From Podarcis liolepis (lineage: Eukaryota), in the NCBI GenBank assembly GCA_965112155.1, contig OZ218099.1: a DNA stretch of 64,000 bases. One strand, 5' to 3'. Numbering within the stretch: the first letter of the stretch is position 1; the number at the start of each line of letters is the position of its first letter. Position numbers and translations under genes: made by a program. Shown here one piece after another: positions 1 to 56,340 of the stretch. Below the pieces are notes generated by a model that searched no databases, had not been told where the DNA came from, and saw only the letters and a program-made list of their open reading frames with translations.

Positions 1-119
1 CCTTTAACTTTACCTTTACTATGAGACAATAGAGTCTATTGTCCTAGATAAAGAGATTGATCACTAACTCTTCAAGAGGCAACTATTCCACTGTATGAGT
101 AGATTTTTTATTTTTATTA

Positions 120-1020
120 TGGATCCTTTTCTATCAAGGATTCAGGTCCGGTTTTGGAGACTGCCTTGGTCTCCTGGGGGATAATCTTTGCCAGGAAAGG
201 GGCAAACCCAGGAGAAATGCCATCAAAGGAACAATGGCAAGAGAAGTTGATGAACTATGCAGAGTTGGCAAAGTTAACAGATAAACTGCATGAAAAAGAC
301 AATAGTGATTTTGACAAAGAATGGGAACCTTTTACATCATATCTGCAGACAGAAACAACAACAAAAATATAGAGTCATTGGCAGACTTTAAATAAACATT
401 TGAAGTTTTATTTATAAAAAAAATAGGAAACATAATAGTAGGACAATATAGAAGTATATATAAACAGCAGAATGTGATATGAGATGTAATAAACCAGGGA
501 TGGAAGTTGAGGGAAGTCAGTGGGGAAGGGGGAAATTGAAATTTGAATGTAATGAAATGATTACAGATATTGTTAAAGAAAAGAAAAGAAAAACCCAGTA
601 AAATGATTTATTTATTTTTAAAAAAGGAAAGGGGCAAACCCTGTTGATTCTCCTAGATTTCTCAATGACTCCTGAATCCTGATACCCTTGAACATGACAT
701 CTTTTGGGAGAGGTGGCGGGACTGCTCAGTTGGAGATGGAGATACTTTTGAAGGGTTTATCTGCCCAGGTAAGTGGCATTCAGCTTGTTCCAGAGGGGTT
801 GCACTCACCCTAAAGGATCAGGGTAACCATCTGATCCATTTTTATTGCTGGAGGTTCAGCAACTTAGGCTGGTATGCCAAGTGCAGCCTGGCCTCAGTTA
901 TCCATACATTTGGGTGATTATATGGGCCTGCCTTTGAAATAATTCAGAATATGAGTGCAAGATTGCTAAAGGGGACTGGGTGATTTGAGCACATCATACC
1001 AGTATTTCATTGTCTTCACA
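120..1020 (+). mobile_element. Degenerate L2-clade LINE RT fragment, interrupted by an L1
   Basis: Remnants resembling QSGFRPG..ETALV, then LLILLDFS after the insertion, and a QN-x-x-ARLL motif near 945-970. Confidence 0.65.
210..624 (+). mobile_element. 5'-truncated L1-type LINE 3' end with 17-bp TSD
   Basis: ORF2 C-terminus-like peptide (PSKEQWQEKLMNYAELAKLT...EWEPF) and A-rich tail. Direct repeat aggaaaggggcaaaccc at 193-209 and 625-641. Confidence 0.8.
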
Positions 1021-1744: not shown

Positions 1745-2865
1745 CTGTACAAGAAAACTGAGAGAAGATTTGGGGTATAATATACAGTTTGCAGCATGGG
1801 AAAAACTATGGAGAGAGGATCTGAAATTTACAGCGTGGTATACATTGAAATAAAATTATATGAAAATGATGTACCGCTGGTATGTAACCCCCAGTAAATT
1901 AGCCAAAATGTACGGGACAAGCTACAATGTTTGTTGGAAATGTAAGGAGAAGGAGGGCACCTTTTACCATAAGTAGTGGAATTGTAAAGTGATCAAGGAA
2001 TTCTACAAAATGATATACAATGAGTTGAAGAAAATATTTAATAATCTTTGTTAAAAAAACAGAAACCTTTTTTGTTATGAATTGTAGGTGCAGAGATACT
2101 GAAGGAACTGAAAAGTCTGTTTATGTACACGACAACAGCTGCAAGGATGCTGCTTGCCCAGAGCTGAAAGATGATAAGATACCTACGAGGGCAGACTGGC
2201 AGATGAAATTATTGGACTATGCAGAGATGGCAAGGAAAATCAGAAATCAGAAGGATCAAAACTTCAACAGAGAATGGGACAAATATAGATTGTATTTGAA
2301 AGACCACTGTAAACATTTGAACTCTTTGGCAGGTTTTAAATAACTCTTACAATGATACATCGACTTTGGATATAATGGACAGGGCCGCCTTTACCCAGGG
2401 GTGGGGGGCACCTGGGTGCTGAATTCTGCGGGGTGCCAGGCACCCGCTGCTTAAGCTCTTAACTATCTACCTGTTATGAAATAGTAATTTTGATCAAGGT
2501 AGAAGAACAAAATACATATATACCTAGGTACTACCGAAATGTATACCTACTGTTTCACTAAAAGACTTTTGACTTTGTGTGCTCATTTACCAAAGATGTG
2601 CCGTGCCAGTGGTGGTGCTTGTCATTCACAAGGCTAAACGAAATTTGGGGGTGCTGGGAGGATCCTTGCACCCCGGCGGCACATATGCTAAAGACAACAC
2701 TGATAATGGAGGACTGTTAACTAGATGTACTTATGATATGCAGTTGGAAAAGTTACTTAAAGAACCCATGGAGGGGAGGAGTGAAGTCTTAGGATTCGAA
2801 AGAATCTTGTATAAAATTCAAATATTTGCAAGAATATTATTTCTGTGAATGAACTTGTAAATAAC
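1745..2865 (+). mobile_element. L1-type LINE 3' fragment with CCHC zinc knuckle
   Basis: [17 protein letters not shown]...[16 protein letters not shown], followed by an ORF2 tail related to 210-372. Contains stops and frameshifts. Confidence 0.8.
2380..2702. mobile_element. Non-autonomous hAT element nested in the L1
   Basis: 8-bp TSD ataatgga at 2372-2379 and 2703-2710. Imperfect TIRs CAGGGCCGCCTTTA and CAGTGTTGTCTTTA. Confidence 0.8.
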
Positions 2866-14579: not shown

Positions 14580-14969
<390 letters not shown>

Positions 14970-18547: not shown

Positions 18548-18598
18548 CTTTGTTGAATACATTTCTGGACAATGATATGTGCCAATTATTCTTCTGTC
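18548..18598 (-). CDS. GABRB2: Cassette exon, 51 nt, chicken-type beta2L: DRRIIGTYHCPEMYSTK
   Basis: Acceptor ttttattaacttacag| and donor AAG|gtatat; phase 0-0, 17 codons, ends in the S-x-K PKC consensus. This fits the published description of chicken beta2L (a 51-nt exon with a putative PKC site). Confidence 0.8.
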
Positions 18599-22720: not shown

Positions 22721-23803
22721 TAATGTTAATCAGCCAAAGGCCTGGTTAAAGAGAAACTGGCGCCTAGTTCCTAAAGATATGTAATGAAGGCACCAGGTAA
22801 GCCTTAGTTGGTTGTTTCTGAGAGAATGAACAGGCTTCCAGGTTTTCAAGCACGCTGTCCGTAGATATGTGACATAATACAGAGACTACTGAGCCAAAGT
22901 TTATCATTATATGCAGAGTACTCTTAAATCACAGCCAACATGTCCACATAATATACCTTATCTAAAAGTGCAGATGCTGGCCACATCAGTTCAGACTGTA
23001 TTCTGAAGAGAGGTTTGCCTCATAGAATCAATAATGGAAGTTTTATTAACATATATTGAAATGATTTAATTGTCAAAGGAAGTGATTTCTATATGAACAC
23101 TTCTACAAAATAGCAGATCCTATTTGTGTATTATTGGACAAAGATATTGTGGGATAAAAGTTTAGACAAAAATAATAATAATGAGTTTATAAGTGAGTAG
23201 ACTTGAAAAACAAATAAATCTCAGGCAGTAAACTAAAAAGAAGTTTGCTAGTAGCAAAGGCAGTTGAACTTTTTCAACTTTTGCAACCAGAAAGAACATG
23301 TGCAAATCTGTACAATTATGTAAAAGAACTGAATCTTGGCACAGAATTCTAGGCTCCTTCTACTAAACGCTGCTTAGTAAAACTCCTTCATTCTCATGTA
23401 AATACTGTTGCTTACTAGGTTGTTATAAATTACTACTGCTGATATTACTGTTGCATCTTCATATAAGATAATAAGAGCATGCAAGGTGCATCAAACAGGT
23501 TAGAGCAGTAGCAAGAGAGAAGAGATCCCAAAACAGGAAATAAGGGAAGCTCAGAATGTTAAATCTCAGATAGGCATAAGCCCCAAAGAAGCTATCCAGA
23601 AAAAATTGCAGTGCTAAGAAATTATTGATAAATGATTTACATACTCTGCATGGAAAATGAAGAGAAAAAAATATTGCTCACTGAAGGAAACAGAGTTGCA
23701 CAATACCTGGAACAAAGCAAATCCAAGATGGTATGATATCCAAGCAGTGTGAAAAGTTTTATGGATTAAGATTTCATGTTGGCTTCAAGTATGAATGTGT
23801 ATG

Positions 23804-23807
<4 letters not shown>

Positions 23808-23857
<50 letters not shown>
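23808..23857. repeat. (TA)n microsatellite
   Basis: Read directly. It explains the spurious YIYIYI ORFs. Confidence 0.95.
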
Positions 23858-23859
<2 letters not shown>

Positions 23860-24069
23860 AACAACAAATGGAAGAACAAAGCTCAACCTCAGTATATTGG
23901 GAAATAGATTACACAAAACAAGTAACTGCTTACACACACACATATATACACACACAGAGAGTCTCATACAAATAAAAGACAAACGGAAATGCATCCAAAA
24001 ATAAACTTTTCAACTTTCAGGCACTCCTCAATGAATCTGTGAAAAACTAAGGAATACTAAAATAATCTA

Positions 24070-24700
24070 GAAGGAGCCATAGTTCCCACTAAAACGAGGA
24101 ATAAGTTAAAATCGTGACTCCATACTAGAACCTTAGCAGTCAACTCCATAATAATAAAACAAATGGAGTATGTGCTATATTCACAAAGGGCTAGACCAAC
24201 ATGGTTTAAAGCTAAACCTACTAAATTAATTCATAAATTGTCATTGCAACATAGATTATTTATATAAAAATTCTTTTGTTGCTTTTCTACTAAAAGAATT
24301 CAAAGTGACTTACAATGTAATGGATGATGAGAAAACAGTGGATATTTTATCTGGGTTTTAGTAAAGCATTTCATACAGCACTATACAATATCTTATGGTT
24401 AGAAAGCCAACATAAGATGTCTTGGACAATTAGTACAATCAAATGGATCAAAAACTGGCTATCTAACCGTATTAAGAGAGTAATCGTAACTGGCAGTCCA
24501 TCTAGATGGGGAGAGATTTCCAGTGGGATCCAGGGATCGCAATTCGGTCCCATTTTGTTTTATATCTTTATAAAAGATCTGGAAGACAAAGTAGAGAATA
24601 TGCTAAATAAGTCTTTTGGCTTCTACTAATTAGGGAATGGTGAGCAGAGCTAGAACTAACATAGTAGTTGTAAAATAACTCTAAATACTTCTTTGAAATT
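24070..24700 (+). mobile_element. Ancient CR1/L3 LINE RT remnant overlapping the beta2L exon in antisense
   Basis: ORF 24324-24629 reads YLGFSKAFH...[42 protein letters not shown], i.e. the CR1 motifs DFSKAFD, W..NWL..R.QRV and GVPQGS.LGP.LFNIFINDL. A QHG remnant lies near 24197. Outer boundaries are approximate. Confidence 0.85.
24468..24578 (-). CDS. GABRB2: Cassette exon, 111 nt, orthologue of the mammalian beta2L exon: [37 protein letters not shown]
   Basis: Acceptor tttgtcttccag| and donor ACG|gttaga; phase 0-0, no stop. Aligns with the human 38-aa beta2L insert as I recall it ([38 protein letters not shown]). Confidence 0.9.
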
Positions 24701-30225: not shown

Positions 30226-30501
<276 letters not shown>

Positions 30502-30508
30502 TCAAAAA

Positions 30509-30682
30509 NNNNNNNNNNNNNNNNNNNNNNNNNNNNNNNNNNNNNNNNNNNNNNNNNNNNNNNNNNNNNNNNNNNNNNNNNNNNNNNNNNNNNNNNNNNN
30601 NNNNNNNNNNNNNNNNNNNNNNNNNNNNNNNNNNNNNNNNNNNNNNNNNNNNNNNNNNNNNNNNNNNNNNNNNNNNNNNNNN
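30509..30682. other. Assembly gap, 174 N
   Basis: Run of N. Confidence 1.
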
Positions 30683-31155: not shown

Positions 31156-31311
31156 NNNNNNNNNNNNNNNNNNNNNNNNNNNNNNNNNNNNNNNNNNNNN
31201 NNNNNNNNNNNNNNNNNNNNNNNNNNNNNNNNNNNNNNNNNNNNNNNNNNNNNNNNNNNNNNNNNNNNNNNNNNNNNNNNNNNNNNNNNNNNNNNNNNNN
31301 NNNNNNNNNNN
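31156..31311. other. Assembly gap, 156 N
   Basis: Run of N. Confidence 1.
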
Positions 31312-52819: not shown

Positions 52820-53012
52820 TAATAATAATAATTTTTCTTTATACCCCACCCATATTATATTTTTTAAAAAAACAACCTAATAAGACATAAAAAATGTCCC
52901 AATACAGGGCTGCCTTCAGATGTCTTCTAAAAGTCAGATAGTTGTTTATTTCCTTGACATCTGATGGGAAGGTGTTCCACAGGGCAGGCGCTGCTACCAA
53001 GGAGGTCCTCTG
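52820..53012 (-). mobile_element. L2 LINE 3' end
   Basis: Minus-strand peptide APALWNTFPSDVKEINNYLTFRRHLKAALY is typical of an L2 ORF2 C-terminus. Confidence 0.75.
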
Positions 53013-55647
53013 TACTTTTTTTTTCAATCTGAGCCTGATAATCCCACATGTGCCTCTTTGGTTGCTGGCAGTAAAAGTGCAATCATTATAGATCTGTAGC
53101 TTCTAGTGTGGTGTGCCAGCCATGACCTTGCCACTGCCCTGCCCCACTCCATCTAGCACCATTCAGGAAAGCTGCAGAGATGCCGGTGTTGGGAAAAGTA
53201 GCTCTGCACCACCATACAAGACACTACTCTTATGAACTAAATAATTAGCTGCCCATTCAATACATCTAGAATCAGCTGCCCTCCCACTCTGTTTGACGGA
53301 ATGGCCAGTGCTACCCAGCCTGCTTCCTAGCTCCTCCACCTAGTCACGGTTCTCAAATGTTGAATGAAAATCCTCTTGATAGGGACCATAAGGACTAAAC
53401 TAAGCATGACTGGCAAGATCTATGATTAAGATCTCCCAGCAATGTAATCATAATTTAAAAAATAGTAGCTGTAGCATGCCACCAATCAGATTAGCACTGT
53501 GGCACTGGAAATCTTGTTCACCTGATAAAAATTATGCCCCTTAGCTGCTAGTATCTCTACAGAGCAAGTAGTATTTTGGGGGGTGGGGGACAATTTTATT
53601 CACAAAAACATCACCAGTGGGGTGGGGGAAGGGCTAAGACCCCTCTTCACCAGCACTGCAGTCCTAAGGCCATTCTCACCACAGCTGCTTTGTTCATTGA
53701 TTTAACCATCTCCTGACCACAAGTTTTGTCTCCCATGTCATTGCAAAAACAAGATTATTATTATTTTTTTAAAAATGACTACTAATAGTATAATAACGCT
53801 TACAGTAGGTTAATCCAAACAATCTGTGATCGGATATTAGAGCCACAATGAGAGATGGCGAGAAAAGAATTATTTCTCGGCTTTTAAAATATATTTTTCT
53901 CCTGTTGCCCAAAGTAAGAAATTAGCCCATTTATGCAATTCTACTGGATGACAAAGTTACAGAAGTGGGAATTTGGACTGCAGCAATTTTAAGCTGAGCT
54001 GGCAGCACTTTCAACAAAAGAAAATACTATGATTAGCAGATTTCATTATTCCATACAAAAATAGCTGTTCAGTTCTAGCAGGTTTAAATTCTTGTTGCAG
54101 CTGTTATAACAACCGGACATCTTCAAAGCCTGAAATTCATCATTTCCCCATGCCAGGAGGTAGGGGTTATTTATACAGTCATTTACAAAGCTAAGTTATT
54201 GGTTCAGAAGCAATGTGTAATGAATGAGGCAATTCAGTTTTCCTAAAAGATTTTGCAGAAGTACCTAGGGTACTCAGCCTCCCTGCTTCTCTAGAGGCAA
54301 AAAGTATAACAGGAATGAACAATACCTGTTTTAACCTAACATGAACTTGCATGTTTTCTAGTATGGGTCAAGACGGGAACATCTTATATGCTGTTTACTG
54401 GTCTGGATCATAAAGAATCATATATTTAGTTAAACAAAACATCTTAGACATGTTGAATGCAATGATAGTGCAGTATTGCTTGGTGAATATGAGACAATGG
54501 AATATGAGACAAAGACCCACAAAAAAAATATGTTTCAGTGCAACTAAGGACATAAAGATTGACCAGTATTAGTTCTGAAATGCAGCAGATACTCCAGGCA
54601 ATACTTTCTTTTTGGAAAAGAACTGGAGAATGCCTCTACCAGCGTGCATTCACTCTGGGATAATCCATTTGCCACTAGTGATGCCAATAAATCAAACTCC
54701 CAATATATTTATTTTGAAATTTTTAAGTATGGATTTACTAACTCTGCTCCTAAACTGGACACAAAGGACAGCCAATGCGTTACTTAGATAATCTCAGAAG
54801 TCCAACAAAAACAGTTTATACTCATGAAGATTGATGCAGTTCTCCAATATATAAAGTTTGCTGTTTGATATTCTATCCAAGGCACACTAATTACACTTCC
54901 TCATTTTTCTTAAAAGCAGATGTCATGTGCTAGATTTTTAGAGCAGATAATGAACAGCAATGAACATACACAGTGCCAAGAACTGCTGTCAGAAACATTA
55001 GTAAATTTTTGATCTTATGGATACGTTCAGAGTAGACTCTAGTACCTTTGGTGAAGAGTTATTTGACAAATGAAACAAAGGCTACAATTAACTCTCTCCA
55101 CGGTTTCACACAGTGAAAAATGAACAGGACTCCACATGCTTCTGTTCTTCAAAATGCAAACATAGGTATTGTTTTGTAAAATGTCTTAGAGAGCAGCAAG
55201 ATAACACATTACATATCTATATATGCCTACAAGCAATAACAGAAATTTGGCATTCATGAGTGTTGCACAGCAGATCTAAAGTATCACATTTTAACCAGAA
55301 ATCAATATGACAGAAATCAATATTCCTACATTCCTGGGAGCAAGCCCCACTTAACCCCATTGACACTTTCTTCTGAGTAGGCATGTATAGGATTGCACTC
55401 AAAAGTAAGACCCAATGAGCCTACTGAAACTTATTCCTAGGTAAGTGTTATAAGACTGCAGTTTTGTTTTAAATCAAACAAAACAAAAACATTTCAAAAG
55501 ACAAGGAAGGATAAAACTGAGCAGCAGTAACAAAACTTTTTCCACCGAAGGATGGCTTTTTATGCTTCATACTGTACTTTTCTTTAGATGTTTCTAATTA
55601 CTCTGTAAGCCACCTTGAATCCTGGTTTAGGAAAAGGCAGGGATATT

Positions 55648-55910
55648 ATAGAATCATGGAATCATAGAGTTGGAGGGGACCCAAGGGTCATCTAGTCCAA
55701 CCCCCTGCAAAGTAGGAATCACATCTCCTCTCATTCACCTCTTTTCCAAGCTAAACATACCCAGCTTCTTCAACTACTCCTCATAAGTCTTGGTTTCCAG
55801 ATCCTTGACCATCTTGGTTGCCCTCCTCTGCACATGTTCCAGCTTGTCAACATCCTTCTTAAATTGTGGTGCCCAGAATTGGACACAGTATTCCAGGTGT
55901 GGTTTGACAC
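55648..55910 (-). mobile_element. CR1 LINE 3' fragment with an internal deletion
   Basis: agaatcat..aatcatagagttgga 3' terminus and an [29 protein letters not shown]-like peptide. Followed by (TAT)n(TAG)n. Confidence 0.85.
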
Positions 55911-56012
55911 TATTATTATTATTATTATTATTATTAGTAGTAGTAGTAGTAGTACTTTAGTACATATATGCAAACACAACATATTTGCAGACAATGTTAT
56001 GCAAGTCAGATA

Positions 56013-56340
56013 CAGTGGTGCCTCGCAAGATGAAAAGAATCCGTTCTGTGATTCTCTTCGTCTAGTGGTTTTTTCGTCTTGCGAAGCAAGCCCATTGATG
56101 GATTAGCGGATTAGCGCTATTAGCAGCTTAGCATCTGCTGATCGGATCAGCTGATAAGCAGCTTAGCGGCTTAGAAAAAGGGGGGGAAGGAAAAAAAACC
56201 CGCAGGAACTCGCAAGACATTGTCGTCTTGCGAAGCAAGCCCATAGGAAATTCGTTTTGCGAAGCACCTCCAAAACGGAAAACTCTTTCGTCTAGCGAGT
56301 TTTCCGTCTTGCGAGGCATTCGTCTTGCGGGGCACCACTG
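56013..56340. mobile_element. Tc1/mariner MITE
   Basis: TA|CAGTGGTGCC(T/C)CGCAAGA...TCTTGCGGGGCACCACTG|TA. CpG-rich, so probably young. Confidence 0.9.

What the first reader, a model, noticed from the sequence alone, without database searches (positions are those of the whole stretch)
24324..24629. The GABRB2 beta2L exon reads as the antisense strand of a CR1 LINE reverse-transcriptase motif
Seen: the 111-nt cassette exon (24468-24578, minus) lies entirely inside a + strand frame reading ...YLGFSKAFH...[49 protein letters not shown]. The two frames are in exact codon register (exon ATC is the complement of RT GAT). The acceptor comes from the complement of the L-E-D-K codons and the donor from S-N-R. 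Known: these are CR1/L3 RT motifs A and B, and the peptide matches the mammalian 38-aa beta2L insert. Inference: a CR1 copy inserted before the mammal-reptile split and was exonised in antisense, creating a regulated receptor isoform. CR1 similarity is best kept at and near the exon, suggesting selection. I do not know whether this origin is already published.
Basis: partly seen in the sequence, partly recalled or inferred. Interest (0 to 1): 0.92.

Follow-up and report, generated by a model that had tools for sequence, protein, structure and literature searches.

The report
GABRB2 cassette exon from antisense LINE
The optional 37-codon exon of this lizard's GABA-A receptor beta-2 gene really does lie backwards inside the decayed reverse-transcriptase gene of an ancient CR1/L3 jumping element, but the overlap of this exon with a LINE3 element was already noted in print in 2009, so it is a good example, not a discovery.

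Summary
On the minus strand, 24468-24578 is a 111-nt phase-0 cassette exon of GABRB2. It lies between the M3 exon (donor at 30244) and the last exon (acceptor at 14927). On the plus strand it sits in exact codon register inside a 102-codon open stretch (24321-24626). That stretch carries a motif-A relic and a motif-B relic of a LINE reverse transcriptase.

Support for the RT reading is moderate. The window's frame matches Pfam RVT_1 at E 0.002. All 8 squamate versions match, best E 2e-4. 29 of the 30 nearest ESM Atlas clusters are RVT_1. Two more distant clusters carry the canonical VPQGS..GP.LFNIFI motif and a precomputed RVT_1 hit.

The acceptor and its pyrimidine tract are the complement of the Leu-Glu-Asp-Lys codons. 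The GT donor is the complement of the Asn codon in Ser-Asn-Arg.

It is largely known. Zhao et al. [quoted passage not shown] They also state that the human exon and its flanks are annotated as LINE3.

The parts
24468..24578 (-). 111-nt phase-0 cassette exon of GABRB2 (lizard counterpart of the mammalian beta2L exon 10), 37 codons
   Evidence: Translation without stops; splice signals; codon table. Lies in the M3-M4 loop intron between 30244 and 14927.
24579..24598 (-). Acceptor AG and 80% pyrimidine tract. It is the complement of the purine-rich Leu-Glu-Asp-Lys-Val-Glu codons of the RT frame.
   Evidence: Sequence reading; pyrimidine share.
24462..24467 (-). Weak 5' splice site GTTAGA. The GT is the complement of the AAC (Asn) codon in Ser-Asn-Arg of the RT frame.
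   Evidence: Sequence reading.
24321..24626 (+). Relic reverse-transcriptase reading frame of a CR1/L3-type LINE: 102 codons open, catalytically dead
   Evidence: ORF list; open-stretch statistics; Pfam RVT_1 E 0.0021 and 8 of 8 orthologues, best 2.2e-4; ESM Atlas 29 of 30 RVT_1.
24348..24374 (+). Motif A relic (Y-L-G-F-S-K-A-F-H), lying in the intron on the donor side of the exon. The catalytic Asp position reads Gly.
   Evidence: Sequence reading. Resemblance to the CR1 Y-L-D-F-S-K-A-F-D block is from general knowledge and was not tested against a CR1 library.
24522..24581 (+). Motif B relic ([20 protein letters not shown]), antisense to the 5' half of the exon. It is one codon shorter than the canonical S-G-V-P-Q-G-S form.
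   Evidence: The canonical form appears in the more distant clusters returned and listed.
30244..30488 (-). Upstream constitutive exon (M3 and start of the cytoplasmic loop), donor AAG|gtaagt at 30244
   Evidence: open-stretch listing.
14580..14927 (-). Last coding exon (loop end, M4, stop), acceptor cag|ATG at 14927

Best explanation
A CR1/L3-type LINE copy landed, in the opposite orientation to the gene, in the intron that splits the M3-M4 cytoplasmic loop of GABRB2. This happened before squamates and mammals diverged.

Read in antisense, its reverse-transcriptase region offered three things:
- a pyrimidine tract plus AG, the complement of the purine-rich Leu-Glu-Asp-Lys codons after motif B;
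- a weak GT donor, the complement of an Asn codon;
- a stop-free 37-38-codon frame in phase 0.

The piece became a symmetrical cassette exon. It adds a Ser/Thr-rich peptide to the intracellular loop and so makes the long (beta2L) receptor isoform. In mammals this isoform shows a steeper current run-down when ATP is low, linked to a CaMKII site (published).

Selection on the exon and its splicing-control flanks has since preserved about 300 nt of the element. The rest decayed beyond recognition.

Shown here: exon anatomy, register, splice-site derivation, RT likeness, and conservation of the frame in several squamate sequences. Inferred: timing, a single origin, and use of the exon in this lizard.
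For: - Exon and splice sites.
- Exact codon register and codon map.
- RT likeness: Pfam RVT_1 E 0.0021 over residues 4-93, model positions 67-144; 8 of 8 squamate frames match, best E 2.2e-4; ESM Atlas 29 of 30 nearest clusters RVT_1, top 0.96 with 204 of 256 shared features.
- More distant clusters P0003 and P0004 (73-74% identity) carry a precomputed PF00078 hit and the canonical V-P-Q-G-S-I-L-G-P-I-L-F-N-I-F-I block. They keep the same S-N-R and L-E-D-K codons.
- The open stretch of 102 codons is unusual for this A+T-rich DNA.
- The copy is unique in the window, so it is not a young repeat.
- Literature: the human exon 10 with 85 bp upstream and 66 bp downstream is annotated LINE3. Exon 10 is found in mammals and lizard, not in chicken, frog or fish. 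The 38-aa insert brings Thr365 and stronger run-down (PMC2741204).
Against: - The Pfam score is below the family's gathering cut-off.
- Neither the intronic flank nor the exon part alone gives a Pfam hit, and the flank alone is not recognised as RVT_1 by the Atlas.
- No PDB reverse transcriptase was matched.
- No CR1/L3-specific model or sequence was available, so the clade (CR1/L3 versus another LINE) rests on the published RepeatMasker call and on motif resemblance from general knowledge.
- Absence from chicken needs a secondary loss.
Confidence: 0.85

Rival explanations
1. Chance resemblance. The exon arose from ordinary intron sequence or is older than any LINE. Its antisense frame merely looks like an RT, and the L3 call on the human exon is a false positive of repeat masking on a conserved exon.
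For: The Pfam score of 18.3 bits is under the 29.6 cut-off. The pieces alone give nothing. The flank alone is not named RVT_1. PDB search gave nothing.
Against: E 0.002 to 2e-4 in a frame fixed beforehand by the exon. 29 of 30 Atlas neighbours are RVT_1. Motif A and motif B relics lie in the right order and spacing, with motif A in the intron, where the coding constraint cannot have shaped it. The more distant clusters read closer to the canonical motif, not further from it. An independent RepeatMasker L3 annotation is reported in PMC2741204.
Confidence: 0.08
2. One old LINE insertion, but the exon was recruited independently in squamates and in mammals, or the element is from a different LINE clade (for example L2 or another CR1-group lineage) than L3/CR1 proper.
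For: No clade-specific test could be run here. Chicken uses a different 17-codon exon (PMC2741204), and a chicken-type 51-nt exon also exists in this window at 18548-18598. So this intron has produced more than one cassette exon.
Against: The S-N-R and L-E-D-K codons that carry the splice sites are the same in the squamate and in the more distant clusters. The exon is phase 0 with the same first and last residues in both groups according to the published alignment. The published annotation says LINE3.
Confidence: 0.06
3. A young squamate CR1 copy that only by accident overlaps an unrelated open frame; the minus-strand 'exon' is not used.
For: Exon use in this lizard was not shown. A CR1 3' end fragment elsewhere in the window (55773-56102, minus) shows that CR1-type elements have inserted in this genome.
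Against: The copy is unique in the window and has no near-identical relatives. The catalytic residue is lost and the rest of the element is gone. The same stretch is conserved in 7 other squamate sequences and two distant clusters. The published alignment identifies exon 10 in lizard.
Confidence: 0.01

Closest known systems
Human/mouse GABRB2 exon 10 (beta2L isoform), annotated as LINE3 in the UCSC RepeatMasker track (Zhao et al. 2009, PMC2741204)
   Same: Same gene, same intron, a phase-0 cassette exon of 37-38 codons in the M3-M4 loop. The paper itself aligns the exon in lizard. The LINE annotation covers the exon plus short flanks, as the RT-like frame does here.
   Different: The lizard exon is one codon shorter; the squamate RT frame lacks one codon of the V-P-Q-G-S block. 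From my recollection of the human peptide, the position of the CaMKII site Thr365 is not Thr here. Exon use in the lizard was not shown. The paper does not state orientation, reading-frame register, RT motifs or splice-site derivation.
Exonisation of antisense transposable-element fragments in general (Alu, MIR, L2 and LF-SINE exons, e.g. the PCBP2 exon of Bejerano et al. 2006, cited in PMC9004415)
   Same: An intronic retroelement supplies a pyrimidine tract, AG and GT in antisense and becomes an alternatively spliced cassette exon. A weak splice site goes with alternative use.
   Different: Most such exons are young, lineage-specific, frame-breaking and rarely included. This one is amniote-old, frame-preserving, coding and functionally characterised in mammals. 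It also comes from the protein-coding RT region of a LINE, in register, rather than from a SINE or a UTR.
Ancient CR1 protein fossils in vertebrate genomes (Frith 2022, PMC9004415)
   Same: A several-hundred-million-year-old CR1 pol fragment recognisable only at the protein level and kept by selection.
   Different: That survey dropped alignments that overlap protein-coding annotation, so exon-overlapping fossils of this kind were outside its scope. GABA-receptor genes are not mentioned in its main text.

Membership tests
TE-derived (exonised) cassette exon | The exon lies inside sequence with significant similarity to a transposable element | tested here: met
   Pfam RVT_1 E 0.0021; 8 of 8 squamate frames, best 2.2e-4; Atlas 29 of 30 RVT_1. 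The score is below Pfam's gathering cut-off, so the support is moderate.
TE-derived (exonised) cassette exon | TE similarity runs past the exon into both introns | tested here: inconclusive
   The Pfam alignment spans residues 4-93, that is 24333-24602, beyond both exon ends. The flank alone gives no hit. The published human annotation extends 85 bp and 66 bp beyond the exon.
TE-derived (exonised) cassette exon | Both splice sites are made of TE-derived sequence | tested here: met
   The acceptor and its tract are the complement of the L-E-D-K-V-E codons. The donor GT is the complement of the Asn codon.
TE-derived (exonised) cassette exon | Exon absent from lineages that split off before the insertion | not testable with these tools
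The literature says not found in frog or fishes, and not in chicken.
TE-derived (exonised) cassette exon | Exon is included in mature mRNA | not testable with these tools
Published for human, monkey and mouse, not detected in rat.
CR1/L3 clade LINE reverse transcriptase | RT motifs A and B in the right order and spacing | tested here: met
   Match to RVT_1 model positions 67-144. The F-S-K-A-F and Q-G-S..G-P.L-F.I-F-I blocks are 50 codons apart.
CR1/L3 clade LINE reverse transcriptase | Best match to CR1/L3 rather than other LINE clades | not testable with these tools
   No Dfam/Repbase library and no CR1 protein could be fetched. The assignment rests on the LINE3 annotation quoted in PMC2741204 and on motif resemblance from general knowledge.
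CR1/L3 clade LINE reverse transcriptase | Intact catalytic residues and the rest of ORF2 (a working element) | tested here: not met
   The motif A Asp position reads Gly. There is no F-A-D-D motif C, and no further RT or endonuclease similarity in the window. It is a relic, as expected; it is filed as derived from the family, not as a functional member of it.
GABRB2 beta2L exon 10 | Phase-0 cassette of about 38 codons between the M3 exon and the last exon, alignable to the mammalian exon | tested here: met
   Position and phase. Alignability of lizard to mammals is taken from PMC2741204. I made no alignment to a mammalian sequence of my own.

The most novel reading that the evidence does not exclude
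The part not found in print is the exact anatomy. A single antisense, in-register exonisation of RT motif B of an L3/CR1 copy took place in the amniote ancestor, with the acceptor drawn from the acidic codons after motif B and the donor from an Asn codon. About 150 nt of donor-side intron still read as an open RT frame through motif A in squamates, presumably because it is a conserved splicing-control region. If so, this is one of the oldest coding exons known to be built from the antisense strand of a LINE pol gene, in a major drug-target receptor.
Probability: 0.75. Interest if true: 0.4.

Novelty: already known. Interest (0 to 1): 0.3.

Why it matters
It is a clear, old and functionally studied case of a jumping-gene fragment turned into a regulated protein segment of a neurotransmitter receptor. 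The long isoform changes how the receptor behaves when ATP is low, and it has been linked to schizophrenia-associated variants. Knowing that the exon and its flanks are a frozen LINE fragment explains the weak splice sites. It also points to the conserved flanks as the place to look for splicing regulators. It does not open a new question, because the LINE3 overlap is in the public repeat annotation and in a 2009 paper.

Tried and rejected
- PDB sequence search with the antisense frame: no reverse transcriptase, only chance hits.
- Whole-library phmmer with the 37-aa exon peptide: two unrelated repetitive bacterial-type proteins and no GABRB2. The 50% cluster representative probably lacks the insert.
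- ESM Atlas on the flank alone: unnamed short clusters, only 1 of 30 with some RVT_1.
- tblastn and motif scan for other RT copies in the window: none. So no in-window CR1 RT comparator exists.
- Paper search for the CR1 motif string: irrelevant hit.
Searches used only 24324-24560, and local scripts only read the window file.
- Clusters P0003 and P0004 look like more distant, probably mammalian, versions of the same stretch. One may be human (many near-identical variants from metagenome assemblies). I therefore did not use them as queries, align them or look for more of them. This also cost me the only route to genuine CR1 RT sequences.
- The exons were searched one by one by reference. The joined spliced model was not built or searched.
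- Rbfox GCATG sites near the exon: none within 200 nt on either side.

Full report
**What is in the window.** GABRB2 runs on the minus strand.

- The exon coding M3 and the start of the cytoplasmic loop ends ...DVNK|gtaagt at 30244.
- The last exon starts cag|ATGGATCC at 14927 and runs to the stop after ...YYVN.
- In the 15.3-kb intron between them, 24468-24578 (minus) is a 111-nt stop-free stretch of 37 codons.
- It is preceded by an 80% pyrimidine tract and AG, and followed by the weak donor GTTAGA.
- All junctions are phase 0, so the exon is a symmetrical cassette.
- The two runs of N (30509-30682, 31156-31311) were left alone.

**The antisense frame.** The plus strand carries a 101-aa ORF at 24324-24629 inside a 102-codon open stretch.

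- It is in exact codon register with the exon. One search gives the codon-by-codon map.
- It reads a motif-A-like block (Y-L-G-F-S-K-A-F-H, 24348-24374). That block lies in the intron on the donor side of the exon.
- Fifty codons on, it reads a motif-B-like block ([20 protein letters not shown], 24522-24581). That block is antisense to the first half of the exon.
- The acceptor AG and its pyrimidine tract are the complement of the Leu-Glu-Asp-Lys-Val-Glu codons.
- The donor GT is the complement of the AAC codon in Ser-Asn-Arg.

**Is the RT likeness more than chance?**

- Pfam RVT_1 matches the frame at E 0.0021 (18.3 bits, below the 29.6 gathering cut-off), over residues 4-93 on model positions 67-144.
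- A word-indexed search of 5.8 billion proteins returned only four clusters.
- Two of them (95% and 87% identity, seven sequences in all) are evidently the same stretch in other squamates. All 8 squamate frames match RVT_1, best E 2.2e-4.
- The other two clusters (73-74% identity) carry a precomputed PF00078 hit. They read the canonical V-P-Q-G-S-I-L-G-P-I-L-F-N-I-F-I block, one codon longer than the squamate form. They keep the same S-N-R and L-E-D-K codons.
- The ESM Atlas places the frame among RVT_1 clusters: 29 of 30 neighbours, top score 0.96.
- An open stretch this long is unusual here. 3.6% of the window's codons lie in stretches that long, and P is about 2e-4 from local composition.

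On the other side:

- Neither the flank nor the exon part alone reaches Pfam.
- The flank alone is not named RVT_1 by the Atlas.
- No PDB reverse transcriptase is matched.

I rate the RT origin as well supported, but by moderate statistics.

**What could not be done.**

Its one call is spent, so there is no RNA evidence for this lizard.
- The two more distant clusters look mammalian. One may be human, because it has several near-identical variants from metagenome assemblies and one variant seen on 391 contigs. I did not use, align or extend them.
- That left me without genuine CR1 RT sequences, so the clade assignment was not tested here.
- The spliced model was not joined. Exons were handled one by one.

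**Literature.** Zhao et al. 2009 (PMC2741204) state the following:

- The 38-aa exon 10 gives beta2L and brings a CaMKII site at Thr365.
- Beta2L receptors run down more steeply when ATP is depleted.
- Chicken expresses a different exon 10.

The E9-E11 distance they give for non-mammalian land vertebrates (14-19 kb) fits the 15.3 kb seen here. Further searches found no other paper that links GABRB2 with exonisation, CR1 or repeats at this exon. Frith 2022 dropped alignments that overlap protein-coding annotation.

**Mechanism.** An L3/CR1 copy inserted antisense in the M3-M4 loop intron before the squamate-mammal split.

- The acidic, purine-rich codons after motif B gave a pyrimidine tract and AG in antisense.
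- An Asn codon gave GT, with a non-consensus T at position +3. A weak donor fits alternative use.
- The in-register antisense frame happened to be free of stops.

Selection on the peptide and on flanking splicing signals then froze about 300 nt of the element. Among the squamate sequences, the donor-side flank is about as conserved as the exon, while the acceptor side decays after about 25 nt. The S-P-x-R site in the peptide is a possible proline-directed kinase site; this is inference only.

**Verdict.** Novelty is low: the LINE3 overlap is in the public repeat annotation and in print since 2009, and antisense TE exonisation is a well-known process. That would deserve a sentence in a review, not a new study.

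Noticed in passing
window 18548-18598 (minus): A 51-nt, 17-codon phase-0 stretch flanked by ttacag| and |gtatat in the same intron. It fits the 'chicken-type' 17-aa beta2 insert flagged by another first-stage note. So this intron holds at least two candidate cassette exons of different origin.
   Followed up: partly
window 24498-24512: The exon contains a 12-nt perfect palindrome (CCATCTAGATGG), so both strands read S-P-S-R-W there. The other squamate sequences read S-P-S-S-W in the RT frame, so the palindrome is specific to this genome and probably accidental.
   Followed up: partly
window 55773-56102 (minus): An open stretch reading ...[29 protein letters not shown]... next to a long A/T-rich trinucleotide run. 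It looks like the C-terminal end of a CR1-type ORF2, that is a separate, much younger 5'-truncated LINE copy.
   Followed up: no
window 103-369 and 2029-2340 (plus): Two open stretches with clearly related translations (...W-Q-x-K-L-x-x-Y-A-E-x-A-K/R...D-x-E-W-x-x-F/Y...Y-L...). They are two copies of some repeated coding element, not identified.
   Followed up: no
window 52842-53102 (minus): An open stretch ending ...A-L-W-N-T-F-P-S-D-V-K-E-I-N-N-Y-L-T-F-R-R-H-L-K-A-A-L-Y. This peptide-like reading is typical of a reptile SINE/LINE tail family.
   Followed up: no
window 23780-23880: A long (TA/TATA)n microsatellite about 600 nt from the exon on its donor side.
   Followed up: no
window 30509-30682 and 31156-31311: Two masked runs of N. 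The first begins about 20 nt beyond the acceptor of the M3 exon.
   Followed up: no
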